From positions 248,001 to 312,000 of the IMG/VR virus record IMGVR_UViG_3300037882_001770: a stretch of DNA of 64,000 nt. The stretch is one strand, 5' to 3'. This document shows positions 8,569 to 23,336 of this stretch, one piece after another (the first letter of the stretch is position 1; every line of letters begins with the position of its first letter). A program made the translations under genes and the position numbers. The notes below the pieces were generated by a model. It was not told the origin of the DNA and searched no databases. It worked only from the letters and a program-made list of their open reading frames with translations.

Positions 8569-10848
8569 ATGCAAAATAATCCCGAAATTGAACAAATTAT
8601 CGAATCTGCGGTCCGCATTGCAAAAGATAAACAGCACGAATACGTACTGACTGAACATGTGTTGCTGGCCATGTTGAAGTATGCGCCGTTTCGCAAAGTC
8701 TTGGCCAAGTATGGAACCACTGTGGATTTGTTTGAACAGGAATTAGAAAGTTATCTTGACAGCCTAGTTAATCTTGTCAAGGCAAATGCCAACTTACAAC
8801 CTAAAAAAACAAATGCACTCGAGCGTTGTTTCAACCGAGCTCTTACTCAGGTACTGTTCACTGGACGTAGAACAATTACCACAGCAGATTTATATCTGGC
8901 CATGATGAGTGAAACAAACAGTCATGCACACTATTTCTTGTTGAAGTATGGCGTAAAGAAAAACGAGTTTGTTGAGTTTTGGCAAAAACACTACAATCAC
9001 AATGATATTAAAATTACCGACCAACAGGCTGATGAAATTTTAACTGAGCACTGTACTGATTTAACCAAGATGGCGCATGAAAATCAACTTGAGCCAATGA
9101 TTGGTCGCAGTAGTGAACTAGATGAAATGATCACAGTGCTGGCTCGCAAGTTCAAAGCCAACGTGCTTATGGTTGGAGATCCCGGAGTAGGCAAGACAGC
9201 TATTGTAGAAGGCCTAGCCCAGGAAATCAATGCAGGACGTGTTCCTGAGTTTCTTAAAGGCTACGAAGTGTGGGGGCTCGAAATTGGCAGCTTGCTTGCT
9301 GGTTCAAAATATCGCGGCGAGTTTGAAGAAAAATTCAAACAAGTTATTAGTGCGTTAGAAGCCAAGAAAAATTGCATCTTGTTTATTGATGAGGCGCACA
9401 CTATGAAAGGTGCTGGCAGTTCTAGCAACAGCACACTTGATTTTGCAAACATGTTAAAACCGGCCATCACCAAGGGCAATTTAAAGGTGGTAGCCAGTAC
9501 TACCTGGGAAGAATTTTACGAATCGTTTGAAAAAGATCGTGCATTGATGCGCCGTTTCCATCGCGTAAGCATCGACGAACCCAACGACGAAACTACAGAA
9601 CAGATTCTAATTGGACTTAGTCCACGTTTGGAATCATATCATAATGTGTTGATTGACACAGATGCTATGACAGCCGCTGTGGAATTAAGTCGACGTTATA
9701 TTCATGATCGTCAAAATCCAGACAAGAGTATCGACTTGTTAGACGGTGCCTGTGCTAAGGAACGTGTTAAAGATATGGGCACAGTGACTATTACCAAGGA
9801 CATGATCATGGCTCAGCTCAGTAGGATCACAAATGTTCCGTTGGATCGTTTACAAAACGAACGTTCGACTAAAATTGTTGATTTAGAAAGCAACATCAAA
9901 CAGAAATTATACGGACAAGATGCCGCAGTCGACGCAGTATTGGATCGTGTGTACATCAACTTCTCTGGTATCGGTAACCAAACACGCCCAATTGCTAGTT
10001 TCTTGTTTTTAGGACCAACAGGTACAGGTAAAACAGAGCTTGCCAAATTGTTAGCCGAAAACTTAGACATGCAGTTGTTGAAATACGATATGAGTGAATA
10101 TCAAGAACGGCATACAGTATCAAGTTTGATTGGTGCACCCCCGGGCTATGTAGGATTTGATGATGGCAATCTAGGTGGCGGCAAACTAATCGCCGACATT
10201 AGTAAAAACCCATTTAGTATTGTGTTGTTTGATGAAATTGAAAAGGCGCATCCGGATGTGATCAATATCATGTTGCAGATGCTGGACGAAGCCAGACTTA
10301 CCAGTAGTAATGGCAAAACTGTGAATCTCAAGAACTGCATTATCATTATGACCAGTAATTTAGGCGCCAAAGACAACGAAAGTAACAATATTGGATTTGC
10401 TCAAAGTTTAGAAAAATCAGGCGAAGAAAATCGTGCAATGAAAGAATTCTTCAAACCTGAGCTACGTAATCGTATTGATCAAATTTGCAAGTTTGTTAAA
10501 TTGGACACATTGGCCATCAAGAAGATTGTGGTCAAGTTTACAGACCAGTTGCAATCCAGTCTTGCTGACAAGAACATCCGTCTCACTCTAAGCGAACCAG
10601 TGATTGATCTGTTGGCTGACAAAGGCTACGATAATAAAATGGGTGCAAGACCACTTAATCGCAAAATTGACGAATTGATACGAGTACCGTTGTCTAAGAA
10701 AATTTTGTTTGATCAATTGACCAACTGCAATATCCATGCAGTGATCAATGGTGATGCAATTGATTTTCAAATTACACCCATGGACGCTCAGCCCATAGTT
10801 GACAGTGAAGGATACATAGTTCTTGATCAATTCAAGCCCACAATCTAA
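8569..10848 (+). CDS. clpA: ClpA-like AAA+ unfoldase
   Basis: Two AAA modules (GDPGVGKT, GPTGTGKT), LIGAPPGYVG, IGF ClpP-docking loop, no ClpB middle domain. Confidence 0.9.
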   Translation: MQNNPEIEQIIESAVRIAKDKQHEYVLTEHVLLAMLKYAPFRKVLAKYGTTVDLFEQELESYLDSLVNLVKANANLQPKKTNALERCFNRALTQVLFTGRRTITTADLYLAMMSETNSHAHYFLLKYGVKKNEFVEFWQKHYNHNDIKITDQQADEILTEHCTDLTKMAHENQLEPMIGRSSELDEMITVLARKFKANVLMVGDPGVGKTAIVEGLAQEINAGRVPEFLKGYEVWGLEIGSLLAGSKYRGEFEEKFKQVISALEAKKNCILFIDEAHTMKGAGSSSNSTLDFANMLKPAITKGNLKVVASTTWEEFYESFEKDRALMRRFHRVSIDEPNDETTEQILIGLSPRLESYHNVLIDTDAMTAAVELSRRYIHDRQNPDKSIDLLDGACAKERVKDMGTVTITKDMIMAQLSRITNVPLDRLQNERSTKIVDLESNIKQKLYGQDAAVDAVLDRVYINFSGIGNQTRPIASFLFLGPTGTGKTELAKLLAENLDMQLLKYDMSEYQERHTVSSLIGAPPGYVGFDDGNLGGGKLIADISKNPFSIVLFDEIEKAHPDVINIMLQMLDEARLTSSNGKTVNLKNCIIIMTSNLGAKDNESNNIGFAQSLEKSGEENRAMKEFFKPELRNRIDQICKFVKLDTLAIKKIVVKFTDQLQSSLADKNIRLTLSEPVIDLLADKGYDNKMGARPLNRKIDELIRVPLSKKILFDQLTNCNIHAVINGDAIDFQITPMDAQPIVDSEGYIVLDQFKPTI

Positions 10849-12524: not shown

Positions 12525-13274
12525 ATGCGCACTATTGTAATATATCCAGGAAGATTTCACCCATTTCACCGAGGCCACAAGGCCAGCTACGATTATCTTG
12601 TTCAGCAATTTGGTGCGGGCAATGTGTTTATTGCAACTAGCGATGTGCAGGCTCCTGTTACCAGTCCGTTCAGCTACAGCGACAAGGTAACTATGATGTC
12701 TAAGTTAGGCGTACCCTCGGGCAGAATAGCGCGAGTCAAAAGCCCGTACCAGGCCACAGAAATTACCGGGCAAATTGATGACAAAGAGCACACTGCCTTA
12801 ATATTTGCTGTCAGTGAAAAGGACATGCAAGGCGACACAGCTAGATTTAAATTTGGCACAAAAAAGAATGGCGAGCCCAGTTACATGCAACCCATGCCAG
12901 TGGCTGGTAAATTGCAACCAATGTCAAAACATGCGTATGTGATGATCACACCCACAGTCAATTTCAAAGTCAAAGGTGCCGACGCCAACAGTGCCAGTCA
13001 AATAAGAAAATTATATCTAGACGGAAACGACGCGGACCGCGATCAAATCATTGCAGATTTGTACGGAGAAGTTGAGCCACACATTCGAGATATATTTGAT
13101 CAGCGGTTGGCAGTGACACAAAATACACAAAATTTAGTTGCAGAAGCAAGAATTAAAAATCCTGGTCGTGCTGTAGCATTGTTAGAAGCCATATCAAGGT
13201 TGGAAAAAACAGCCAATTATATCGAATTTGAAGACCTTAGTTTAGACTACATCAACGAAAAACTCAGCCGCTAA
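12525..13274 (+). CDS. HxGH nucleotidyltransferase (cytidylyl/NMN adenylyltransferase-like)
   Basis: YPGRFHPFHRGH and C-terminal SASQIR; TAAATA 5 nt upstream. Confidence 0.75.
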   Translation: MRTIVIYPGRFHPFHRGHKASYDYLVQQFGAGNVFIATSDVQAPVTSPFSYSDKVTMMSKLGVPSGRIARVKSPYQATEITGQIDDKEHTALIFAVSEKDMQGDTARFKFGTKKNGEPSYMQPMPVAGKLQPMSKHAYVMITPTVNFKVKGADANSASQIRKLYLDGNDADRDQIIADLYGEVEPHIRDIFDQRLAVTQNTQNLVAEARIKNPGRAVALLEAISRLEKTANYIEFEDLSLDYINEKLSR

Positions 13275-14217: not shown

Positions 14218-17200
14218 ATGAATATTAATGAACTGGATTCTTTTCGTCTTTCTGATGCTGTAAAGTTTAATGATACATTAAACCCACGTCTGTGGGACAA
14301 GCAAGAAAAATTAAAGCCCGAAATCCGAAATCGTCTGTTGGAAATAGCCGACGATTTTCGTGAGTTTTTAGGCGTTACTAATTTACAACTCAAAGACATT
14401 ACAATATCAGGCTCTAATGCAGCCTATACCTACACCCCACACAGCGACATTGACCTGCACTTAGTGGTGGACCTGCCCGAAGCAGATCAAAACGAAGTGT
14501 ACCGTGAATTGTTTGACGCTAAAAAATATCAATACAATGATATGCACAATATCAAACTTGGTGGGCACGATGTAGAATTGTATGTTGAAAATGCCAACAA
14601 AAAACCAGTTAGTCAAGGCATATACAGTGTCTTGAACAACGAGTGGGTTGATATTCCGCAACGTAAAAAAGCCAATGTTGACGACATTAGCACTCGCAAC
14701 AAATACAATGATTTGAGTCAGCGCATTGATTCTGCTATTCGCAGTGGCGATCAAGAACAGATAGAAACACTCAGCAGCAAAATCAAAGAAATGCGTCAGA
14801 CTGGACTAGATCAGCACGGTGAATTTGGTCCAGAGAATTTGGCATTTAAAATGTTGCGTACTCAAGGCAAAATCAAAGAGCTATACGATGCTCGCAATGC
14901 GGCCAAAGACGAATTGTTGAGCTTGGATGAACGCAAAAAGAAACGCAAAAAGAAAGTTCGTTACGGATACGGCGGTTACTGGTATCCAGGCACAGCCTAT
15001 GCCGGTCAAGATCATTCAGCCGGAACCGAAGGTGGTGGTGGAGACGGTGGTGGTGGTGGTGAAAGCATCAGAGAATCTGCGGAAACCACCGACGAAGAAA
15101 TTCTTAAAGACTTTGTTGACTTTTGTGTCAAAGAATTAAAAATAGAAAATTTACCAATTATTAAATTACGACGTGATCCGCAATGGCCGGTGGTGCACAA
15201 AACCTTTGGGCGTTATAACGATGACAAAGAAATGCTGGAAGTGGCATTCGGTCAACGACACATTATGGATGTGCTTCGCACAGTGGCGCATGAGCTTACC
15301 CATCGGCATCAACACGAGCGTGAAGACGTTCCGGGTGATGCCGGTGAAACCGGCAGTCCTTACGAAAACGAAGCCAATGCCAGGGCCGGAGTACTCATGC
15401 GTGACTATGCCGGACTGCACCCAGAATATTTCAAAGTAGGACAAGCAGAAGAATCACACTGTGACGAAGTTGATGAAGGGCTCAAAGGTAAATTAGGTGC
15501 CATGGCTGCTGCGGCGTGTATCGCTGGCACCCCTGGATGTTCAACTACTGCTGGTGCTCTTAAAACTGCACAAGATGTTGGGCGCACTGCTCAGACTGTT
15601 AAGAACATGAGCCGTGCTGGTGTTCAAGATGAGCTTGGCCAAGAACTGCGTAATTTTCTTCGGGCCCAGGGCGGCGAACCTGGCAGTCAAAATCAAAGTA
15701 GATTGTACCAATTACAAAAGCGAGCCACACAAAAAGAATCAGCTAGTGGCTATATTCCCACAAAGAAACAAGCCAAAGATCCACGTTTCAGCATGGCACT
15801 TACACAGGATATCAAGCCTGGCCAACTGGGTAAAGAGGCAAACAAATTAAAATTAAAGACCGATCGTCAAGGCCATCCGCAAGTAGCTAGCCCCAATGGC
15901 TTGTTTGAAAAATTAAGTTTAGAATTAAACAAATTTAAAAAAGGTGAAACAGACGAAGACTATAGTCCAGACAATCCGCCCGGACCCGAGTTTAAGCCCA
16001 CTATGCCAGCAGGAACTCTGCGTGTAGATGTAAGCGATGTATATGATTGGTACAAATTAGGCCAACATATCAGCAACATGCAAGGCCTAGGCAAACATGA
16101 TTTTGGTCAAGGTCCTCCTGGTGCTATTGTTAGTTTTGGTGACGAAGATACCGAACATAAATTTATCCAAGATCTTGAAGCCACTGGGTTGGATATCACA
16201 GACATTGATCCTGCAGATCCAAAACAACCTGCTGGGATGCGCACCATCAAAACAGATCCTACATACAAGGTAGATGAAGTAATACAAGCTCCTGTAAACA
16301 AATATAAAGATGATAAACAGTATTATAATTTCATTATGGCCAAACATAAACTAGGCCGCCCATTAACACGTCAAGAACAAGAATATGTAAGAAGCTACAA
16401 AATGTTTAATCAACAAGTTGCAGAATCTGTTGACCAACTAGACGAAGTGGCCATGAGCCCCAGTGCCTTGGCCAAGTGGGCTCAAAGTCCAGAAGCCGAA
16501 GGCATACGTGCTGGTTTTGAAGCCGAACTGATCTTTCGCGATACTACCAATGACGACGATGATGATACCGAAATGGAGCCCGACTATGATTATGACGAAC
16601 GGCCTCGCAGTATATCGGATGTCATAGACTTTTTTAATGGTGGCGACTACGGTGGCCTGAGTGATAGACAAGAAGGTCGATTACAAGACGGTCTAGATCA
16701 ACAGTACATGGAGTGGCAAGACGAACGCATGTATGACGCCTGGCGTGACGAACGTGAAGACTTGATCCGTGAAGCCTGGTTGCGTGAAAAGCCCATGGTT
16801 GAACGTGTTCACGACTATCTAGTAGAAGGCATGGACATGGACGATCGAGAAGCTGATCGCATTCAAGCAGCCGGCGACGCGGCCCCACGCTTTACCAAAT
16901 TGAGTGACCAAGAGGCTTACAAACAAGCCAACCCAGATTACGCAACTTATTTGGAAGCCGATGAAGGCGCCGAAGAAATCCTACAAGAAGAAGTTGAGCA
17001 GACCATTGAGAAAGAAGATGGCTTCTACGACGAAGTCCTGGATGAATTCCGCGAGAATTTTTATACTGACGATGACTCTAGCTTCTTTCAGGATGTTGGG
17101 CTGGGTTACATGAGTGACATAGCGTCAGAATACAGCTTAGACTGGCCTTATCTGACTGGATCCGGCGGTGGCAACAACGGTGGACGTCGTGAGTGGGATG

Positions 17201-18855
17201 ATGTTGGCAACAGTTTACAAGATGCTATAGACATGCCGGTTCGAGTCAGCCAGGGCTATCACAGCATGCCACGCAAGGAAGGTCAATGGATTGTGGAACC
17301 TGACTCCAGTTTGAGTCCGGACGACAGAGAAGACTTTGGCTTGGAAATAGTAAGCCCACCCTTGCCCCTATTGACTGCACTGGAAAAACTGCAAGAAGTC
17401 ACCGACTGGGCCAACAATCCCTCAGAAGGCAATGCCTATACCAACAGCAGTACAGGCCTACACATGGGTGTCAGCGTGCCTTATAAAGGTGGCGATGTGG
17501 ACTACTTAAAACTGATCCTGTTCCTAGGTGACGAATATGTGTTGCAGAGTTTTGGACGTGAAGCTAATACATATACCAAATCAGCTATGAAAGCCTTCCG
17601 TGAAAACATTAGGTCAGGACGTGCTGATCCTGCAGGTGCCATGGCCCTGATGCGGAGCAACCTAATAGAGTTTGCCTATAGGGAAATACAAAAAGGTGTG
17701 GGTGGCGGCAAGTACACCAGTGCGCACATACAGGACGGCTATATTGAATTCCGTAGTGCTGGTGGTGACTGGTTGGCCGAGGAGTCAGCAGATCCCCAAA
17801 AGTTATCCAGTACCATGTTGCGCTATGCTAGAGCCATGCAGATAGCGGCCGACCCTAGTGCCGAACGTAGAGAGTTTGCCAAAAAGTTATACAAGATGGT
17901 GTCTCCCGAAGGTGATAGTCAACTAGCCCTGTTCAGTCAGTTTTCTGCAGGTGAGCTCACAGCAGAACAACTCAAGAAAAAGTGGGCTGAAAAGACCATT
18001 GGCACAGAAAAGAAAGCAAATCAACGCTGGAAGCTGTATCAAATGGCCGACGGCGGATGGCAACCGGTGTCAGGTGCTGAATGGAACGGCTACACTGAAG
18101 AGCAGGTCAAGAATGCTGTATGGAGCAAGTACGGGCGTGAAGCACTAGATTCCGGTGAATACAAGTTGGTCAACATGGGCGAGCAGGAGTGGGAAGTATA
18201 CCGTGTTGACACAGGTGAAACTCTCGAAGTGGTCAAAGGCAAGAGTCGAGGCGAAGTGGCTGATTCAGTGTATGACAAGTACGCAACCCAAAAGATTGGA
18301 TTCAATGTGCGTCCATATCAAGATCCTGCCACCATGACTCCAAGAGCCAAGTTGGCCAAGCGTATTGCAACCAAGAAACCAGAACCAAAACAAGTAGCCA
18401 ACCAAGCAACCAACGAGCGTGGCGTTCCTTATTGGGAAGTATATGACATTAGCAACGACCAGATTGTGATCCATACATTCCTAAGTGATACCGCAGCCGA
18501 CGCCAAAGTAGATGGAGCAAATTGGCTGAAAAGTTTTGGTGCTACACACCCCGAGTTGTTTGCAGTAAGACCCAAGATAAAAACCGCACAGGTCAAAGAT
18601 GTAGAACCTAATGTGGCACAGAACTTTGACAGTGCTCGAGACAGTGCCACCCTGCAGACCAACTTGCAAGGCAGGTCATCGCCGGATGCAACTGAAGTCC
18701 CTCGCAACTGGGAATTCGTAAATCGTATAAACGGTCAAGTTATTCATAATATGACAAATGCCAGCTATAACCAGGCCAATGTAGTGCAAGATAATCTTGA
18801 ACTTAGATATCCAGATGCAGACATATATTTGCGTAGTGTAGAGAGATCAAATTAA
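14218..18855 (+). CDS. Large polyvalent protein: Pol-beta nucleotidyltransferase + zincin metallopeptidase + amidoligase + repeated C-terminal modules
   Basis: ISGSNA...SDIDLHL (GS/DxD); VAHELTHRHQ...ENEANA; GFEAEL, EPDSSL, EIVSPP, STGLHMGVS, IEFRS. Confidence 0.75.
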   Translation: MNINELDSFRLSDAVKFNDTLNPRLWDKQEKLKPEIRNRLLEIADDFREFLGVTNLQLKDITISGSNAAYTYTPHSDIDLHLVVDLPEADQNEVYRELFDAKKYQYNDMHNIKLGGHDVELYVENANKKPVSQGIYSVLNNEWVDIPQRKKANVDDISTRNKYNDLSQRIDSAIRSGDQEQIETLSSKIKEMRQTGLDQHGEFGPENLAFKMLRTQGKIKELYDARNAAKDELLSLDERKKKRKKKVRYGYGGYWYPGTAYAGQDHSAGTEGGGGDGGGGGESIRESAETTDEEILKDFVDFCVKELKIENLPIIKLRRDPQWPVVHKTFGRYNDDKEMLEVAFGQRHIMDVLRTVAHELTHRHQHEREDVPGDAGETGSPYENEANARAGVLMRDYAGLHPEYFKVGQAEESHCDEVDEGLKGKLGAMAAAACIAGTPGCSTTAGALKTAQDVGRTAQTVKNMSRAGVQDELGQELRNFLRAQGGEPGSQNQSRLYQLQKRATQKESASGYIPTKKQAKDPRFSMALTQDIKPGQLGKEANKLKLKTDRQGHPQVASPNGLFEKLSLELNKFKKGETDEDYSPDNPPGPEFKPTMPAGTLRVDVSDVYDWYKLGQHISNMQGLGKHDFGQGPPGAIVSFGDEDTEHKFIQDLEATGLDITDIDPADPKQPAGMRTIKTDPTYKVDEVIQAPVNKYKDDKQYYNFIMAKHKLGRPLTRQEQEYVRSYKMFNQQVAESVDQLDEVAMSPSALAKWAQSPEAEGIRAGFEAELIFRDTTNDDDDDTEMEPDYDYDERPRSISDVIDFFNGGDYGGLSDRQEGRLQDGLDQQYMEWQDERMYDAWRDEREDLIREAWLREKPMVERVHDYLVEGMDMDDREADRIQAAGDAAPRFTKLSDQEAYKQANPDYATYLEADEGAEEILQEEVEQTIEKEDGFYDEVLDEFRENFYTDDDSSFFQDVGLGYMSDIASEYSLDWPYLTGSGGGNNGGRREWDDVGNSLQDAIDMPVRVSQGYHSMPRKEGQWIVEPDSSLSPDDREDFGLEIVSPPLPLLTALEKLQEVTDWANNPSEGNAYTNSSTGLHMGVSVPYKGGDVDYLKLILFLGDEYVLQSFGREANTYTKSAMKAFRENIRSGRADPAGAMALMRSNLIEFAYREIQKGVGGGKYTSAHIQDGYIEFRSAGGDWLAEESADPQKLSSTMLRYARAMQIAADPSAERREFAKKLYKMVSPEGDSQLALFSQFSAGELTAEQLKKKWAEKTIGTEKKANQRWKLYQMADGGWQPVSGAEWNGYTEEQVKNAVWSKYGREALDSGEYKLVNMGEQEWEVYRVDTGETLEVVKGKSRGEVADSVYDKYATQKIGFNVRPYQDPATMTPRAKLAKRIATKKPEPKQVANQATNERGVPYWEVYDISNDQIVIHTFLSDTAADAKVDGANWLKSFGATHPELFAVRPKIKTAQVKDVEPNVAQNFDSARDSATLQTNLQGRSSPDATEVPRNWEFVNRINGQVIHNMTNASYNQANVVQDNLELRYPDADIYLRSVERSN

Positions 18856-19436
18856 TGAGAGCACAAGAATTCCTTGCTGAAAACAAGCAAGCCACTGCAA
18901 AACAAGTGTTGGCCTATATCAACCAAACACACCACGAGCCCATGACCGCAAAGTTGACCACGGCTGTGCGGGCACACCCACAGTGGGAACTGCGTCAGGT
19001 TTCATTACAGAATCTCAACATACCTGATCAGGACTACGAAGATCCAGAACAAGAGCCCGAGAGTGACCCTTACGGTCGTGTTATGGCAGTTGATCCAGAT
19101 CATGCCAACGAATACAGCACTCGGGTAGTAGATCGACACCCTATAGTGATTGATGATCAAGGCTATATTATAGATGGTAATCACCGAGCTTGGGCCGCCG
19201 CAGAACTGTTAAATCGTGATTCTATATCAGCATGGGTGCCGGTTAAACAAGATATGACGGAAAACTTTGCTGATGGCAAGGTCAAAGGCAAAAGTCGTCC
19301 AGGGCGTGTAAAACGTAGTGGAGCTAGTTGCAACGGAAGCGTAACAGATCTACGAGCTCGTGCTAAACGTGCAAGTGGCGAAAAGGCCAAAATGTATCAT
19401 TGGTGTGCCAACATGAAATCAGGAAAGAAAAAATGA
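18855..19436 (+). CDS. ParB/Srx-like domain plus basic Cys module; CTS-like N-terminus
   Basis: MRAQEFLAE; PIVID...IIDGNHRAWAA; C-terminal ENFADGK...HWCANMKSGKK. Confidence 0.7.
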   Translation: MRAQEFLAENKQATAKQVLAYINQTHHEPMTAKLTTAVRAHPQWELRQVSLQNLNIPDQDYEDPEQEPESDPYGRVMAVDPDHANEYSTRVVDRHPIVIDDQGYIIDGNHRAWAAAELLNRDSISAWVPVKQDMTENFADGKVKGKSRPGRVKRSGASCNGSVTDLRARAKRASGEKAKMYHWCANMKSGKKK

Positions 19437-20863
19437 GATCAGATGAATTTATTTCAGAAAATTTAAAGAAGTGGTTCAAAGAAAAATGGGTGCGATTTGG
19501 CCCCGACGGCAAGATCCGTGGTGACTGTGCTAGAGGAAGCAGCGGCGAAGGAAAACCTAAATGTTTGCCACAATCAAAAGCACAGGCCTTGGGTAAAAAG
19601 GGTCGTGCTTCGGCCGCGGCCAAGAAGCGTAGGGAAGATCCTAACCCAGAGCGTCGTGGGCCAGCCAAGAATGTGGCCACCAAGGTTCGTGAGGATGCAG
19701 ACCAATGGGAATTACGCATTGTGGATCAGTGGGAAGACGACGATCCTGAAAGCTATGGCAAAATGGATGAGTATGAATTTGATGTGTTACACAATGGTCA
19801 AAGCGTAGGACGTGCTCGTGCTAACAATTATTTCGCCAATTTGTATGTGGACCTAGACAACGGCAAACACATTGAACTTACTCATCAAAAACATGAAAAT
19901 CATCCATTGATGAAGGAATACGAGCGTCTTGTCTGGGGCCTAGACGAAGGGCAAGACCTGGATGAAGCCTGCTGGAAAGGTTATCACAAAGAAGGTATGA
20001 AAACCATGTTTGGCAAACGCTACCCTAACTGTGTTAAAAACAAAAATGAAAGTTTAGAAGTGTACGTCAATCGTGGAGAATGCCCAGGTTGTGGCGGAAG
20101 CATGGTTGCCGAAGATCAAATTACAGAAAAACAAGATGCTTGTTATCACAAAGTAAAATCAAGATACAAAGTATGGCCCAGTGCTTATGCATCTGGTGCA
20201 CTGGTTCAATGTCGTAAAAAAGGTGCTAGTAACTGGGGCAACAGTAGCAAAAACGAAAGTGATGAACAAGAGCTAGATGAAAAATGGAGTCAAAAATACA
20301 AGAGTAGCATTAACTGTGCTGACCCCAAAGGTTTCAGCCAGAAAGCTCATTGTGCAGGTAAAAACGAAAGTGTGGAGAATATGATGGATGAACTAGATAG
20401 AATTTTAGAATTAAGTACAGGAATAAGTGCCGGCGAACGAGCCGAATTAAATGAAGAGTTTGATTTGATTGAATCAATTATTGACACCCTGGCCGATCGC
20501 AATGGTGTAGATGCAGAAGCAATTTGGGAAGACCTAGAAAGTCTTGATGATGATGAACTGTATGTATTTGCAGTTACCCAGGACCCTATCATGGAAGATT
20601 GGCAAAAAGCCAACAAGAAAGACAAGACAGCCGGAATGAGTCGTAAAGCGGTCAAGGCTTATCGTCGTGAAAATCCAGGTAGCAAACTACAAACCGCTGT
20701 TACCACTAAACCTAGCAAGTTAAAAAAGGGCAGTAAGGCCAGCAAGCGTCGCAAAAGCTACTGTTCTCGATCAAAAGGTCAAATGAACATGCACAATATC
20801 AGCTGTGCCAAGACTCCAGACAAAGCTATCTGCAAGGCGCGCCGTCGCTGGAACTGTGAATGA
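19433..20863 (+). CDS. Modular protein of short basic Cys-containing units; CTS-like N-terminus
   Basis: Likely start MRSDEFISE at 19433; Lys/Arg/Cys-rich units separated by acidic xxE linkers. Confidence 0.7.
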   Translation: MRSDEFISENLKKWFKEKWVRFGPDGKIRGDCARGSSGEGKPKCLPQSKAQALGKKGRASAAAKKRREDPNPERRGPAKNVATKVREDADQWELRIVDQWEDDDPESYGKMDEYEFDVLHNGQSVGRARANNYFANLYVDLDNGKHIELTHQKHENHPLMKEYERLVWGLDEGQDLDEACWKGYHKEGMKTMFGKRYPNCVKNKNESLEVYVNRGECPGCGGSMVAEDQITEKQDACYHKVKSRYKVWPSAYASGALVQCRKKGASNWGNSSKNESDEQELDEKWSQKYKSSINCADPKGFSQKAHCAGKNESVENMMDELDRILELSTGISAGERAELNEEFDLIESIIDTLADRNGVDAEAIWEDLESLDDDELYVFAVTQDPIMEDWQKANKKDKTAGMSRKAVKAYRRENPGSKLQTAVTTKPSKLKKGSKASKRRKSYCSRSKGQMNMHNISCAKTPDKAICKARRRWNCE

Positions 20864-21207
20864 GATTTAGCGAATTTGTTGCTGAACAATATCAGTCTCG
20901 TCCGGCTACATTTGCGGACGGAACACTGAGAATGAGCAAACACTTACAAGATCGTAGTGTGCAACGAGATATTCCTATGGCAAGTATAATGAAAGTTTTG
21001 CAGAAACTTGAAGCAGTACGTGGCAAAGATCTAGCAGCATTGCCGCCAACATCATTTATTGTTAAAACTCCTGAAAATTTTGAATTAGCTATTATCAAAA
21101 CTCAAAGCCTAACTACTAACAAAGTAGAATATATAGTAGCTACAGTTCGTCAACAACTAAGACCCGGAGCCGGACAACGAATTATATACCTGGAACAGCA
21201 ACAATGA
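20860..21207 (+). CDS. Hypothetical protein with CTS-like N-terminus
   Basis: MRFSEFVAE; SKHLQDRSVQRDI segment. Confidence 0.65.
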   Translation: MRFSEFVAEQYQSRPATFADGTLRMSKHLQDRSVQRDIPMASIMKVLQKLEAVRGKDLAALPPTSFIVKTPENFELAIIKTQSLTTNKVEYIVATVRQQLRPGAGQRIIYLEQQQ

Positions 21208-22148
21208 GAGCTCAAGAATTTTTATTAGAATATAGAGAGCCTAAAAGTAAACGTGCTCATCGTGGTGGAATAGATCTAGAAGCCTGGCAGGATGGCCTGC
21301 ACTTTCAAATCAATGCCACCAGCCACGGTCGTGAGCTGGGTCGTGTGGCGTTTGATGTTCAATTCCAAGGCAAAGATACAATTCTAGTAGCACAAGATTT
21401 AATGATACACCCAGAATATCGTGGACAAGGTATTGCCGCCGTCATGTATGATTATGCCAAAGAACTGGGCCATGTGGTTGAACGTAGTCCTGAGCAAACG
21501 GATGCCGGCAAACAATTCTGGGACAAGAATCGCGGCGAGGAAGGTCGTGTATGGGAGTCTGAGTTAGATGAAATAGCCCGCATACCGCAAGGTGACTTTG
21601 GCACACCTGGCACCATAGTTCCTCCTGGACCCGAAGTTGAGCGTAAGGAATTGCCCGGCGGGTCTGGACTAACCTACGGCGTAAACAAAGAAAACGATCT
21701 AATAGAAATTATGGTGTTTGATGGTGAGGATCTTGCAGGCGAACTTGACATAGTGTACACTCGCGGTCCAATGAAGACCTGGGCGGTGGATTCGGTTGCT
21801 GTGGAACCCAAGTATCGCGGTCGTGGTATTGCCAAGGCCCTGTACGGCATTGCACTCAGCATACTTAAACTACCGATCGAAGCTGGTCAAATACAAACTA
21901 GCTACGGTCAAAAAATGTGGCTCATGTTAAATAGTATACCCGGAGTTGAAATAGTAGGCGTAGCACAAGATCCAACCAAAGACTATCAACCCAGACCAGG
22001 AGATAACATTGTGCGGCAAAATGCAACATATACAACCTATACATTTCCAGTATCAGCCGGTCAATCCAGCATGCGCAGCCGTAGACCTGGTACAGGCATG
22101 TATACCAGACCCGATACCACAATGGTAGCAAGGTGGACAGGATCATGA
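21204..22148 (+). CDS. Tandem GNAT acetyltransferase with CTS-like N-terminus
   Basis: MRAQEFLLE; IHPEYRGQGIA and VEPKYRGRGIA acetyl-CoA motifs. Confidence 0.8.
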   Translation: MRAQEFLLEYREPKSKRAHRGGIDLEAWQDGLHFQINATSHGRELGRVAFDVQFQGKDTILVAQDLMIHPEYRGQGIAAVMYDYAKELGHVVERSPEQTDAGKQFWDKNRGEEGRVWESELDEIARIPQGDFGTPGTIVPPGPEVERKELPGGSGLTYGVNKENDLIEIMVFDGEDLAGELDIVYTRGPMKTWAVDSVAVEPKYRGRGIAKALYGIALSILKLPIEAGQIQTSYGQKMWLMLNSIPGVEIVGVAQDPTKDYQPRPGDNIVRQNATYTTYTFPVSAGQSSMRSRRPGTGMYTRPDTTMVARWTGS

Positions 22149-22354
22149 AAGCAAAAGAAATCTACGCAACATCAAAAAAACAAGCTACACAGTACAAACT
22201 TTGGGGAGCCAGTGTGTCTATCAAGCAGCCCAATTATGTTGGACGAATTGATGTTACAGTAACAGCCCCCAATGCTCAACAGGCTCGAGTACTAATGAAA
22301 GCTCAGTACGGTGTACAGGACTGGCAAGTAGGCAGTGTTCGAGAGATAAAATAA
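22145..22354 (+). CDS. Hypothetical protein
   Basis: MKAKEIYA..., ATGA overlap. Confidence 0.6.
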   Translation: MKAKEIYATSKKQATQYKLWGASVSIKQPNYVGRIDVTVTAPNAQQARVLMKAQYGVQDWQVGSVREIK

Positions 22355-22419
22355 GGGCTAGTGAGTTAACCGCAACTCCTACCTACATTCCCATGAAATA
22401 ATACACAGCTAAATACAGC

Positions 22420-22716
22420 ATGAATCGTAAATTTGTGCGTGTGTTAGCAGATGTATATTGTGACTGGGAAGGCCTGGCGCCCAACTATCGCGTTTACGTC
22501 AACGATGAATTATTTGCTGAACGCACATGGGTATGGACCAACGAATATTTAGAGGAAATGTTGCAGATTGAAGCACCAGTCGGTGAGTACAATATACGTT
22601 ACGAACTAGTTCCTCCACATTTGGCACATATCGAGGTAAAAAAGATATTTGTTGATTTTGGTCCTGGAACCATGATTGATAACCATACATTAAAGGTACA
22701 TGATGAGAGCCAGTGA
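22420..22716 (+). CDS. Hypothetical protein
   Basis: 98 aa ORF, TAAATA 4 nt upstream. Confidence 0.65.
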   Translation: MNRKFVRVLADVYCDWEGLAPNYRVYVNDELFAERTWVWTNEYLEEMLQIEAPVGEYNIRYELVPPHLAHIEVKKIFVDFGPGTMIDNHTLKVHDESQ

Positions 22717-22906
22717 GTTTATAGCAGAAAATGCCAGCGCAGGCGGCACTAGTAGTGGTAGTATAGCCACAGTGGCTGCACCACTAGGCGGCACCATTAG
22801 TAGAAATGGCGGGAGTTTCTTTACAGGCGCTAAATACTCTAACGACGCCTGTCCTAATACCCCGGACTGGATGAAGAAACAAAAAGGAAAACGACGTGTT
22901 AAGTGA
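22703..22906 (+). CDS. Small protein with CTS-like N-terminus
   Basis: MRASEFIAE-NASAGGTSSGSIATV. Confidence 0.65.
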   Translation: MRASEFIAENASAGGTSSGSIATVAAPLGGTISRNGGSFFTGAKYSNDACPNTPDWMKKQKGKRRVK

Positions 22907-23336
22907 TTTACTAAAAACTTATTTGGCAAGCACATTTGCCTATTACTTAAAAGCCCATATGTTTCACTGGAACGTTGAAGGCCCAGATTTTGGCGAATTA
23001 CACAAGTTTTTATCTAAAATTTATGAAGATGCATTTGATGCCATTGATCCCATTGCTGAATATATCCGTACCACAGAAGAATACGCACCTGGAAGTTTTG
23101 AACGTTTCCAAGAACTAAGCCAAATATCAGGACAAACTAAAGTTCCCCGGGCCCGACTAATGCTAGAAGAATTACTCGCAGATACACAAACCATGATTGA
23201 CATGAGTCGACAAGTGTTTGAGGCCAGCGCAGCAGAAGGTCGCGAGGACATTGCAAATTTTGCAGCAGAACGACAAAGTCAGCATGGCAAATACATGTGG
23301 CAGATGAAGAGTTATTTGAAAGATGCTAGGGCATAA
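22896..23336 (+). CDS. dps: Dps-family ferritin-like protein
   Basis: KAHMFHWNVEGPDFGELHKFL, DPIAEYIR, HGKYMWQM. Confidence 0.9.
   Translation: MLSDLLKTYLASTFAYYLKAHMFHWNVEGPDFGELHKFLSKIYEDAFDAIDPIAEYIRTTEEYAPGSFERFQELSQISGQTKVPRARLMLEELLADTQTMIDMSRQVFEASAAEGREDIANFAAERQSQHGKYMWQMKSYLKDARA

What the first reader, a model, noticed from the sequence alone, without database searches (positions are those of the whole stretch)
14218..18855. 1545 aa polyvalent protein joining nucleotidyltransferase, zincin peptidase and amidoligase domains
Three catalytic signatures appear in order: Pol-beta NTase (GS...DID, ~14400-14460), HELTH zincin (~15290) and a COOH-NH2 ligase/amidoligase (~16500-17800). Four or so WE(V/F)-type repeat units follow. 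Domains are separated by short acidic motifs (IRES, VDEG, QKES, VDEV, LDEVA) resembling prohead-protease Glu sites. Inference: a polyprotein packaged into the head and cut into separate enzymes that nucleotidylate, cleave or ligate host targets. It fits the known polyvalent-protein concept, but its substrates are unknown.
Basis: partly seen in the sequence, partly recalled or inferred. Interest (0 to 1): 0.68.

Follow-up and report, generated by a model that had tools for sequence, protein, structure and literature searches.

The report
Cleavable multi-enzyme polyprotein of a jumbo phage
This 1545-residue gene of an uncultured T4-related giant phage strings a nucleotidyltransferase, a small zinc protease, an amidoligase and several small modules together, separated by motifs that look like T4 head-protease cut sites, so it is probably chopped into separate effector proteins, most likely inside the phage head.

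Summary
The ORF at 14218-18855 (+) is real, and all three catalytic signatures are invariant in 120 homologs of 53-79% identity. The family has more than 1700 metagenomic members and no full-length relative among 50,697 deposited phages.

**Architecture:** NTase, disordered linker, minimal zincin, optional signal-peptide-like module, invariant 65-residue "GYIP" module, variable modules, Amidoligase_2 with a helical insert, then four small beta-beta-alpha-beta units.

**Evidence for cleavage (all comparative):**
- Every junction keeps a (L/I/V/M)-x-Glu motif, the T4 gp21 type.
- Stand-alone versions of the modules begin with short leaders that end at the same Glu, for example MRAHEFITE|ASGYIP and, in Atu_ph07 gp196, KLTE|LKM. 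Compare the T4 capsid-targeting sequence MKTYQEFIAE.
- The five genes directly downstream carry the leader MR..EF..E. Two of them are internal modules of the polyprotein in relatives.
- In 53 of 59 relatives with the optional insert, a signal-peptide-like stretch lies just after such a site; 21 carry a canonical lipobox.
- The stand-alone amidoligase of Atu_ph07 was found in virions by mass spectrometry.

**Verdict:** this is a polyvalent polyprotein, probably cut at its junctions, most likely by the prohead protease. Cleavage, packaging and substrates remain inferred. It is a new variant of a known kind.

The parts
14218..18855 (+). Whole polyprotein ORF, 1545 aa
   Evidence: 120 listed homologs of 53-79% identity share the block order.
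14218..14232 (+). N-terminal pentapeptide MNINE, a possible minimal propeptide ending in I-x-E
   Evidence: I3 and E5 kept in 94% of homologs. Compare Atu_ph07 virion proteins gp199 (MKLTE...) and gp206 (...NIINE|S). Inference only.
14233..14931 (+). Pol-beta-type nucleotidyltransferase domain with helical C-terminal half (res 6-238), ending in LSLDE
   Evidence: PHROG 36119, E 2e-39. Invariant GS, DxD, D/E. Foldseek: CdnE 2.5e-4, AAD(9) 4.4e-4. VIA-align: Z 6-7.3 to MNT, CdnD, AadA. Pfam NTP_transf_2 scores only 16.8 bits against a cut-off of 21.
14932..15075 (+). Basic then Gly-rich disordered linker (res 239-286), bounded by LDE|R and IRE|S
   Evidence: pLDDT below 40 for res 238-288. Length varies from 13 to 53 aa among homologs, but [LIVM]xE is kept at both ends.
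15076..15432 (+). Minimal zincin metallopeptidase domain (res 287-405), HELTH plus YENEAN
   Evidence: Invariant H358, E359, H362, E383, E385. pLDDT about 85. VIA-align: Z 8.5 Wss1, 8.2 selecase, 7.9 IrrE/PprI. Stand-alone 132-aa homolog in Synechococcus phage S-SRM01.
15433..15738 (+). Optional module var1 (res 406-507): VDE|G followed by a signal-peptide-like stretch, GLKGKLGAMAAAACIAGTPGC (nt 15478-15540)
   Evidence: Absent in about half of homologs. In 53 of 59 inserts a hydrophobic 12-mer follows [LIVM]xE within 14 residues; 21 have a canonical lipobox (LSGC/LTGC), 24 have xGC, 7 have AxA. This copy's box (TPGC) is degenerate.
15739..15933 (+). GYIP module (res 508-572), the most conserved non-catalytic block; contains the invariant LFE
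   Evidence: Length of 65 aa is invariant. 617 cluster representatives carry it, in proteins of 51-2006 aa and at any position. Partner domains are ART-PolyVal, GP88, sigma70 r1.1, dCMP deaminase and SLT. No Pfam hit. Absent from deposited phages.
15934..16446 (+). Variable modules var2 (res 573-743), ending in the double delimiter VAE|S..LDE|V
   Evidence: 13 to 907 aa among homologs. Holds GNAT, DUF5661 or DUF6886 in relatives. The delimiter Qx[VIL][AN]E occurs 63 times against 18 +/- 4 in shuffles, 61 of them in var2.
16447..17997 (+). Amidoligase_2 (COOH-NH2 ligase) domain (res 744-1260) with an acidic helical insert (res ~800-975, nt 16615-17142)
   Evidence: Pfam PF12224 above its cut-off. 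Invariant motifs. Insert pLDDT about 90, core 50-75. Stand-alone homologs are Atu_ph07 gp196 and RsoM2USA_26. No PDB fold match.
18019..18846 (+). Four beta-beta-alpha-beta 'WE' units (res 1268-1543). No [LIV]xE site separates them from the amidoligase.
   Evidence: The last [LIV]xE lies at res 1186.
18855..19436 (+). Downstream gene 1: leader MRAQEFLAE, a ParB-like DGNHR motif and a basic Cys-containing tail
   Evidence: Homologous to the C-terminal module of P0074 (44% identity over res 5-193). Its last 60 aa are also the C-terminal tail of about 50 polyprotein homologs, at up to 97% identity.
19433..20863 (+). Downstream gene 2: leader MRSDEFISE, Cys-rich, with C-terminal DUF6321
20860..21207 (+). 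Downstream gene 3: leader MRFSEFVAE
   Evidence: Homologous to an internal module of P0067 (res 1531-1621, E 3e-8).
21204..22148 (+). Downstream gene 4: leader MRAQEFLLE, tandem GNAT acetyltransferase
   Evidence: A GNAT module sits inside the polyprotein in P0088.
22703..22906 (+). Downstream gene 5: leader MRASEFIAE, 67 aa
   Evidence: The same gene in L006 starts MRANEFIAE.

Best explanation
The gene encodes a polyvalent polyprotein of a T4-related (Rak2/121Q/Atu_ph07-type) jumbo phage. It is a string of self-contained modules:
- a Pol-beta nucleotidyltransferase;
- a minimal zincin peptidase;
- an optional peptide with a signal-peptide-like start;
- the GYIP module;
- variable small modules;
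- an ATP-dependent amidoligase joined to four small beta-beta-alpha-beta units.

Each module is preceded by a (L/I/V/M)-x-Glu motif.

Proposed mechanism. The precursor, together with the five leader-bearing proteins encoded directly downstream, is taken into the prohead. There the phage's gp21-type prohead protease cuts after the junction glutamates and frees the modules. The modules then travel into the next host cell with the DNA and act as separate effectors. Some of them then expose a Sec or lipoprotein signal.

Shown: the ORF; the three catalytic signatures and their conservation; the modular architecture; the conserved junction motifs; the leader-bearing neighbours and their exchange with polyprotein modules; and the virion presence of one stand-alone homolog in a cultured relative.

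Inferred: that cleavage occurs, which protease does it, that the protein is packaged and injected, and every substrate.
For: (1) Lineage. The window's DNA polymerase is closest to Phosso/Atu_ph07 (46-50%) and to 121Q-type phages. These 'group 2' jumbo phages carry a T4 gp21 ortholog (PMC7824862; Atu_ph07 gp204).

(2) Known precedent. T4 gp21 cuts after L/I-x-E (PMC9026906). The T4 capsid-targeting sequence is MKTYQEFIAE (PMC8442874).

(3) Junction motifs kept in minimal linkers:
- NTase end: LSL(D/K)E|
- zincin to GYIP: xL(G/E/D/A)E|(G/S)ASGYIP
- GYIP to amidoligase: (V/I/L)AE|S..LDE|V
Conservation is 82-100%. The linker bounded by two of these sites is predicted to be disordered.

(4) Stand-alone modules start with a short leader that ends at the same Glu:
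- P0162: MRAHEFITE|ASGYIP
- P0268: MKIYEIINE|ASGYIP
- Atu_ph07 gp196..KLTE|LKM, and RsoM2USA_26..KLSE|LKM, against QLDE|VAM here
- S-B68 NTase: MKRLLSE|LK.

(5) The five genes immediately downstream, translationally coupled, start MR..EF..E. The leader is conserved at the amino-acid level, not the codon level. Gene 18855 is the C-terminal module of P0074, and gene 20860 is an internal module of P0067.

(6) Signal-peptide or lipobox segments sit inside the protein just after a site in 53 of 59 var1 inserts. Such signals need a free N-terminus.

(7) Atu_ph07 gp196, the stand-alone amidoligase encoded next to the portal gene, was found in virions with 14 peptides and 30% coverage (PMC6102473 Table S5).

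(8) GYIP co-occurs with ART-PolyVal and SLT domains, which are typical of injected polyvalent proteins.
Against: - There is no direct evidence of cleavage or packaging for any member of this family. No cultured phage carries the fusion.
- The protein's own N-terminus (MNINE) lacks the full leader seen on its neighbours.
- The gene lies among lysis, chaperone and replication genes, not head genes. No gp21, portal or capsid gene is in the window.
- One junction in this copy (QKE|S) lacks the hydrophobic P3 residue. V or M at P3 is not the classical T4 preference.
- The fixed order and constant presence of NTase, zincin, GYIP and amidoligase in all 120 homologs is unlike the free shuffling usual for independent effectors.
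- An embedded zincin could be the cutter instead.
- The homologs are related to one another, so motif conservation counts fewer independent events than sequences.
Confidence: 0.5

Rival explanations
1. The polyprotein and the leader-bearing neighbours are processed in the infected cell's cytoplasm by the embedded zincin, acting in cis or in trans, and are never packaged. The freed modules act during the same infection. The signal-bearing ones are exported, for example as superinfection-exclusion lipoproteins.
For: - A zincin with intact HExxH+E is present in all 120 homologs.
- Iyer et al. 2017 propose zincin-driven self-processing as a theme of polyvalent proteins.
- Exported lipoprotein modules make most sense in the producing cell.
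- The gene is not in a head-gene cluster.
Against: - Cutting after Glu with a hydrophobic P3 residue is the signature of gp21-type serine prohead proteases, not of zincins.
- Atu_ph07 and RsoM2USA gave no tblastn match to the zincin, yet their amidoligases keep the L-x-E leader, and gp196 is in virions.
- The leader closely matches the T4 capsid-targeting sequence.
Confidence: 0.2
2. The protein stays in one piece and works as a multi-step enzyme. NTase, peptidase and amidoligase cooperate on one substrate, for example making or attaching a nucleotide-peptide or amino-acid conjugate. The NTase might also regulate the glutamine-synthetase-like ligase by adenylylation, as GlnE does for GlnA (this precedent is recalled from memory).
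For: - The order and length of the four core blocks are strictly conserved in 120 homologs.
- A cytidylyltransferase-like gene lies close to the modules here and in other phages.
- Peptidase-ligase linkage is recalled as a theme of the amidoligase literature (Iyer et al. 2009). That paper could not be read.
Against: - Each module occurs alone in other phages.
- Optional modules, including signal peptides that need a free N-terminus, are inserted between the cores.
- The junctions are disordered and keep protease-type motifs.
- An internal signal peptide would split an ATP-dependent ligase from the cytoplasm.
Confidence: 0.15
3. It is mainly a structural or scaffolding component of the large head. 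On this view the enzyme-like domains are inactive relics and the Glu sites serve only for scaffold removal.
For: - T4 core and scaffold proteins are cut at many L/I-x-E sites.
- The protein has an acidic helical insert and a basic tail.
Against: All catalytic residues of the three enzymes are invariant across homologs. This argues for active enzymes.
Confidence: 0.05

Closest known systems
Polyvalent proteins of phages and conjugative elements (Iyer, Burroughs, Anand, de Souza, Aravind 2017, PMC5512222)
   Same: - Several unrelated enzymatic domains in one phage polypeptide.
- A zincin-like metallopeptidase as a hub domain.
- Pol-beta NTase, GNAT and ParB-type modules in the repertoire.
- Predicted processing and delivery with the DNA.
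- The GYIP module here co-occurs with ART-PolyVal, PF18760.
   Different: - An amidoligase is not among the domains described there: the word does not occur in the paper.
- The NTase there is a minimal firmicute type fused to ArdC-N; here it is an ANT/CD-NTase-like two-lobed domain.
- Processing there is ascribed to the zincin; here the junctions carry gp21-type Glu motifs.
- Internal signal peptides are not described there.
- The core here has a fixed order rather than free shuffling.
T4 internal proteins IPI-III and Alt, with a capsid-targeting sequence and gp21 processing
   Same: - A roughly 10-residue N-terminal leader (T4: MKTYQEFIAE) ending in L/I-x-E and removed by the prohead protease. 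The neighbouring genes here start MRAQEFLAE and similar.
- Diverse, fast-evolving cargo used against host defences.
   Different: - The T4 proteins are single-module proteins, each with its own leader.
- Here many modules are concatenated, with the site repeated at each junction, and the polyprotein's own N-terminus has only MNINE.
- No experiment exists for this family.
Ejection and inner-body proteins of phiKZ, 201phi2-1 and SPN3US, cut by gp175/gp245
   Same: Large jumbo-phage head cargo cut at several x-x-Glu sites, with redundant sites in the propeptide regions.
   Different: - Their motif is S/A-x-E and they belong to a different phage lineage.
- The cargo there is mostly non-enzymatic or virion RNA polymerase.
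Atu_ph07 gp196 (AUZ94978.1) and RsoM2USA_26, stand-alone amidoligases
   Same: - 33-34% identity over the ligase core.
- The same acidic insert.
- Pfam Amidoligase_2 above its cut-off.
- An L-x-E followed by (L/V)(K/A)M just before the GFE.E strand.
- gp196 is virion-associated.
   Different: They are single-module proteins of about 500 aa, without NTase, zincin, GYIP or the C-terminal repeats.
Minimal zincins: Wss1/SprT, minigluzincins (selecase, jannalysin), IrrE/ImmA (M78)
   Same: A domain of about 115 residues with HExxH plus a downstream Glu. Fold similarity Z 7.3-8.5.
   Different: - No family-level sequence match: Pfam M78 only at E 0.009-0.09 in relatives, below its cut-off.
- The subfamily cannot be assigned.

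Membership tests
Polyvalent proteins (Iyer et al. 2017) | Two or more unrelated catalytic domains in one polypeptide of a phage or mobile element | tested here: met
   NTase, zincin and amidoligase lie in one ORF of a phage window.
Polyvalent proteins (Iyer et al. 2017) | Shares domains or modules with recognised polyvalent proteins | tested here: met
   The GYIP module also occurs in proteins with ART-PolyVal PF18760 (E 2e-59), SLT and GP88. Relatives carry GNAT and sigma70_r4 inserts.
Polyvalent proteins (Iyer et al. 2017) | Packaged in the virion and delivered with the DNA | not testable with these tools
   Indirect only: Atu_ph07 gp196 is in virions, and the neighbours carry CTS-like leaders.
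Pol-beta nucleotidyltransferase superfamily | hG[GS] motif, [DE]x[DE] on the next strand, and a third carboxylate | tested here: met
   G65, S66, D77, D79, D118 and E120 are invariant.
Pol-beta nucleotidyltransferase superfamily | Family-level profile match (Pfam NTP_transf_2 at or above 21 bits) | tested here: not met
   16.8 bits here; 18-20 bits in relatives. The profile found nothing among PDB sequences.
Pol-beta nucleotidyltransferase superfamily | Pol-beta palm fold | tested here: inconclusive
   Foldseek: CdnE 2.5e-4, AAD(9) 4.4e-4. VIA-align: Z 6-7.3 to MNT, CdnD, AadA. Model pLDDT about 75. Z below 8 is not decisive on its own.
Zincin metallopeptidases | HExxH helix plus a downstream Glu ligand, in an alpha/beta zincin fold | tested here: met
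   H358, E359, H362, E383 and E385 are invariant. Z 8.5 to Wss1 (99 aligned residues, rmsd 3.0) and 8.2 to selecase.
Peptidase M78 (ImmA/IrrE) | Pfam PF06114 at or above 22 bits | tested here: not met
   No hit for this protein. 16.2 bits in P0064 and 13 bits in the S-SRM01 homolog.
Amidoligase_2 (PF12224, COOH-NH2 ligase) | Pfam score at or above the gathering cut-off of 22 bits | tested here: met
   25.5 bits for the whole protein and 27.6 for the domain. Atu gp196 scores 30.2 over profile positions 46-228; Rso_26 scores 34.3. The precomputed PF12224 hit is present in most homologs.
Amidoligase_2 (PF12224, COOH-NH2 ligase) | Glutamine-synthetase-like fold | tested here: inconclusive
   Core pLDDT 50-75. 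No PDB match by Foldseek or VIA-align wide; best Z 6.4, to an unrelated fold. BFVD hits are only to family members auto-named 'Amidoligase enzyme'.
T4-type head-internal proteins (capsid-targeting sequence + gp21 site) | N-terminal leader of about 10 residues resembling MKTYQEFIAE and ending in L/I-x-E | tested here: inconclusive
   Met for the five downstream genes (MRAQEFLAE and similar) and for stand-alone GYIP proteins. The polyprotein itself has only MNINE.
T4-type head-internal proteins (capsid-targeting sequence + gp21 site) | Cleavage by the prohead protease and presence in the mature head | not testable with these tools
   No cultured carrier exists. There is no gp21 gene in the window.

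The most novel reading that the evidence does not exclude
This family may represent an undescribed delivery logic. A T4-type prohead protease cuts a head-loaded polyprotein and so creates new N-termini, some of which are Sec, Tat or lipoprotein signal peptides. Injected phage proteins would then be re-exported by the new host's own secretion machinery to the envelope. The ubiquitous GYIP module (617 clusters, absent from every deposited phage) would be the internal head-loading or adaptor element that replaces an N-terminal capsid-targeting sequence. The conserved NTase-amidoligase pair would form a new effector activity.
Probability: 0.2. Interest if true: 0.85.

Novelty: new variant of a known kind. 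Interest (0 to 1): 0.7.

Why it matters
- **Concept.** It would extend the T4 internal-protein paradigm (leader plus gp21 cut) from single small proteins to long concatenated multi-enzyme precursors. These occur in a large, uncultured clade of giant phages: more than 1700 family members, on contigs of 320-370 kb.
- **Annotation.** It gives a sequence rule, a leader or junction ending in hydrophobic-x-Glu, by which head cargo could be predicted in metagenomic phages.
- **Domain repertoire.** It adds an amidoligase, the GYIP module and masked signal peptides to the known repertoire of polyvalent proteins.
- **Candidate enzymes.** It names enzymes that are candidates for anti-defence or host-takeover functions. 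These can be tested one domain at a time.

Tried and rejected
- Near-identity DNA search of the gene and of 24 kb of the window against deposited phages: no match.
- Profiles of the three catalytic domains against PDB sequences: nothing. A whole-protein phmmer search gave only Gly-linker noise.
- NCBIfam: nothing.
- Foldseek and VIA-align wide search of the amidoligase/C-terminal model against PDB: no credible match. The glutamine-synthetase-like fold and the fold of the small repeats therefore remain unconfirmed.
- Atu_ph07 gp195, annotated as a nucleotidyltransferase and adjacent to gp196, is not a detectable homolog of this NTase.
- T4 late-promoter motif TATAAATA: one copy in 64 kb, fewer than chance.
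- Atu_ph07 gp21-like protease, capsid, portal and core proteins have no homolog in the window.
- GYIP alone against deposited phages: no match.
- The Iyer et al. 2009 amidoligase paper could not be read, so phage-specific statements from it are not used.
- Rejected as explanations:
  - An assembly or fusion artefact, because 120 homologs share the architecture.
  - An internal hydrophobic stretch acting as an obligatory membrane anchor, because half of the homologs lack it.

Full report
**Observation.**

The ORF at 14218-18855 (+) is intact and encodes 1545 residues.

- NTase: G65-S66 and D77-I-D79 (nt 14410-14454), with D118/E120.
- Zincin: H358-E-L-T-H362 (nt 15289-15303), with E383/E385.
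- Amidoligase: an Amidoligase_2 match above Pfam's cut-off (25.5 bits for the whole protein, 27.6 for the domain, against 22), with the GFEAE, WIVEPDSS, GLEIVSP, GLH and YIEFR motifs.

All of these residues are invariant in alignments of 28-40 homologs.

The C-terminus is predicted to form four beta-beta-alpha-beta units. Three of them are related by profile-profile comparison at 90-96% probability; the first is related only weakly.

**What kind of genome.**

No deposited phage is similar at the DNA level. The family B DNA polymerase at 28388-31045 is closest to Sinorhizobium phage Phosso and Agrobacterium phage Atu_ph07 (46-50%), then to 121Q-type phages of about 350 kb.

The window therefore comes from an uncultured member of the T4-related 'group 2' jumbo phages. 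These carry orthologs of the T4 portal and of the gp21 prohead protease (PMC7824862; Atu_ph07 gp204).

**Family and architecture.**

A search of 5.8 billion proteins gave more than 1700 relatives. The best 120 are 53-79% identical, nearly all are named 'hypothetical', and many lie on contigs of 320-370 kb. Gene order around the gene is conserved on a 338-kb contig.

A MAFFT alignment shows a fixed core with variable slots between the core blocks.

| Block | Residues in this copy | Length among homologs |
|---|---|---|
| NTase | 1-238 | about 237 aa |
| Linker | 239-286 | 13-53 aa |
| Zincin | 287-405 | 118-158 aa |
| var1 | 406-507 | 6-216 aa; absent in about half |
| GYIP block | 508-572 | always 65 aa |
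| var2 | 573-743 | 13-907 aa |
| Amidoligase | 744-1260 | 517-528 aa (551 in one) |
| First repeat pair | 1261-1375 | 115 aa |
| Variable C-terminus | from 1376 | varies |

In relatives the slots hold a GNAT domain, sigma-70 region 4, DUF5661 or DUF6886.

In cultured phages each core module occurs only on its own.
- The NTase is a protein of about 240 aa in T4-like cyanophages, Maribacter phages and Lak phages.
- The zincin is a 132-aa protein in Synechococcus phage S-SRM01.
- The amidoligase is a protein of about 500 aa in Atu_ph07 and RsoM2USA.

**Domain identities.**

*Model of residues 1-410* (mean pLDDT 70).
- The NTase has a two-lobed fold. It resembles CD-NTases and aminoglycoside adenylyltransferases (Foldseek E 2.5e-4 to 1e-3; VIA-align Z 6-7.3).
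- The linker, residues 238-288, is disordered.
- The zincin is compact. Its best matches are Wss1 (Z 8.5), selecase (8.2) and IrrE/PprI (7.9).
- These Z values support the fold class, not a subfamily. Pfam NTP_transf_2 and Peptidase_M78 stay below their cut-offs.

*Model of residues 741-1545* (mean pLDDT 68).
- The acidic insert (res ~800-975) forms a confident helical bundle.
- The ligase core is only moderately confident.
- No PDB match was found.
- The amidoligase call therefore rests on Pfam and on the invariant motifs. BFVD returned only family members that UniProt auto-names 'Amidoligase enzyme'.

**Are the junction motifs meaningful?**

A protein of this size and composition has about 22 [LIV]xE by chance. 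The number alone says nothing. Position and conservation do.

1. The motif is kept at every junction even when the linker shrinks to a few residues (percentages).
   - NTase end: LSL(D/K)E|.
   - Zincin to GYIP: ..L(G/E/D/A)E|(G/S)ASGYIP.
   - GYIP to amidoligase: (V/I/L)AE|S..LDE|V.
2. In relatives with long var2 inserts the delimiter Qx[VIL][AN]E recurs between modules. It occurs 63 times against 18 +/- 4 in shuffled sequences, and 61 of those lie in var2.
3. The two sites at residues 238 and 286 bracket exactly the disordered linker.
4. Stand-alone versions of the modules begin with a short leader that ends at the homologous Glu.
   - The 78-aa protein P0162: MRAHEFITE|ASGYIP.
   - P0268: MKIYEIINE|ASGYIP.
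   - The Atu_ph07 and RsoM2USA amidoligases..KLTE|LKM and ..KLSE|LKM, where this protein has QLDE|VAM.
   - The cyanophage S-B68 NTase: MKRLLSE|LK.
   - These leaders resemble the T4 capsid-targeting sequence MKTYQEFIAE, which gp21 removes after L/I-x-E.

**The neighbours.**

The five genes directly downstream start at 18855, 19433, 20860, 21204 and 22703. The first four are joined by 1- to 4-base overlaps. They begin MRAQEFLAE, MRSDEFISE, MRFSEFVAE, MRAQEFLLE and MRASEFIAE.

Nothing else in the 64 kb has this start, and the conservation is at the amino-acid level, not the codon level. The same leaders follow the homolog on contig L006 and flank stand-alone GYIP genes elsewhere.

These genes and the polyprotein share modules.
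- Gene 18855 is the C-terminal module of the 2476-aa relative P0074, where it is preceded by VDE|NFADG.
- The basic 60-residue tail of gene 18855 closes about 50 other homologs.
- Gene 20860 matches an internal module of P0067.
- A GNAT, like gene 21204, sits inside P0088.

The polyprotein thus looks like a concatenation of the same kind of cargo that is otherwise encoded gene by gene.

**Masked signal peptides.**

The optional var1 module starts, right after a [LIVM]xE site and one or two basic residues, with a hydrophobic stretch.
- In 21 relatives this stretch ends in a canonical lipobox (LSGC or LTGC).
- In 24 it ends in x-G-C.
- In 7 it ends in A-x-A.
- Together with one stretch that has none of these endings, that is 53 of 59 inserts.

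This window's copy reads EVDE|GLKGKLGAMAAAACIAGTPGC, a degenerate version. On L006 a neighbour reads MRAQEFITE|ITRRDFLRGAGALAGSAAVGQTQA, that is, a leader followed by a twin-arginine signal.

A signal peptide 420 residues into a protein is hard to explain unless a cut just upstream frees it. I regard this as the strongest internal argument for processing.

**Virion association.**

Only indirect evidence exists. Atu_ph07 gp196 is the stand-alone amidoligase, identified as AUZ94978.1 by gene order and size, and it is encoded two genes from the portal gene. It was detected in purified virions with 14 unique peptides and 30% coverage (PMC6102473, supplementary Table S5). Several Atu_ph07 head-region proteins also begin with short L/I-x-E leaders.

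**The GYIP module.**

A profile of the 65-residue block found 617 cluster representatives among 1.84 billion. They range from 51 to 2006 aa, and the block lies at any position. Partner domains include ART-PolyVal (PF18760), GP88, sigma-70 region 1.1, dCMP deaminase and an SLT transglycosylase.

This ties the protein to the polyvalent-protein class of Iyer et al. 2017. That paper mentions neither an amidoligase nor signal peptides. The block has no Pfam family and no match in 50,697 deposited phage records. Its function is unknown. A role in head loading or as an adaptor is my speculation.

**Mechanism and rivals.**

| Model | Confidence |
|---|---|
| Head-loaded polyprotein, cut by the gp21-type protease at the junction glutamates into NTase, zincin, small peptides or modules, and amidoligase-plus-repeats, then delivered with the DNA | 0.5 |
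| Same processing, but by the embedded zincin in the cytoplasm, without packaging | 0.2 |
| An uncut multi-step enzyme | 0.15 |
| Mainly structural or scaffolding | 0.05 |

Points against the main model:
- the polyprotein's own N-terminus is only MNINE;
- the core order is fixed;
- the genomic setting is not a head-gene cluster;
- one junction in this copy is non-canonical;
- no experiment exists.

No [LIV]xE separates the amidoligase from the C-terminal repeats. They would therefore stay together as a product of about 800 residues. Substrates of all three enzymes remain unknown.

**Novelty.**

Polyvalent proteins and the T4 leader/gp21 logic are both known. New here:
- their combination in a very large uncultured family;
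- the amidoligase and GYIP modules;
- the protease-type delimiters at every junction;
- the masked export signals.

I rate it a new variant of a known kind, of good interest to phage biologists, with all mechanistic steps still to be tested.

Noticed in passing
window 18855-22906: Five consecutive genes start with the near-identical leader MR(A/S/F)(Q/D/S)EF(L/I/V)(A/S/L)E, which resembles the T4 capsid-targeting sequence MKTYQEFIAE. Nothing else in the 64 kb has it. They are predicted head-cargo genes.
   Followed up: yes
window 18855-19436: A 193-aa protein with a ParB/sulfiredoxin-like motif (IIDGNHRAWAA) and a very basic tail with two Cys residues. The tail is preceded by MTE|NFADG and is reused as the C-terminus of about 50 polyprotein homologs. 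No Pfam hit was found, so the ParB call rests on the motif only.
   Followed up: partly
L006 15115-16392 (contig Ga0620600_0000059): The gene after the polyprotein homolog reads MRAQEFITE, followed by a twin-arginine signal (RRDFLRGAGALAGSAAVGQTQA). This is a capsid-targeting-like leader placed in front of an export signal.
   Followed up: partly
window 8569-10848; L006 3342-6462: The phage encodes a full ClpB/ClpA-type double AAA+ chaperone with a Clp_N domain. On the related contig it sits next to a DnaJ homolog. Both lie a few genes upstream of the polyprotein.
   Followed up: no
window 12525-13274; L003 3605-4927; L002 9115-10152: A cytidylyltransferase-like (HxGH) gene lies close to the modules in three unrelated settings: upstream of the polyprotein here, next to the stand-alone zincin in S-SRM01, and about 2 kb from the stand-alone amidoligase in RsoM2USA. 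A functional link is possible.
   Followed up: no
window 22896-23336: A ferritin/Dps-like gene (Pfam Ferritin, E 2e-20) lies within the cargo-gene cluster. It is conserved on the related contig L006 (17708-18148).
   Followed up: no
L009 3-2249: An HNH_3 endonuclease gene sits between an ORF that ends in a truncated GYIP module (..KIDE|ASGYIPSAKEKNDPRFKTALTV, then a stop) and a GYIP-GNAT gene with the leader MKIYEIINE. It looks like a homing-endonuclease insertion or duplication at a GYIP module.
   Followed up: no
window 19433-20863: The real start is probably the ATG at 19433, which overlaps the previous stop, not the TTG at 19400. The product is Cys-rich, matches PHROG 727 and ends in DUF6321.
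   Followed up: partly
window 20860-21207: Weak Pfam match to the T4 RegB endoribonuclease (E 6e-4, below the cut-off) in a leader-bearing 115-aa protein.
   Followed up: no
L002 258-5074 (RsoM2USA_28-30): From their N-terminal sequences, the genes upstream of the RsoM2USA amidoligase look like a PrkA/YeaH/SpoVR-type trio. This is my recollection and was not tested.
   Followed up: no
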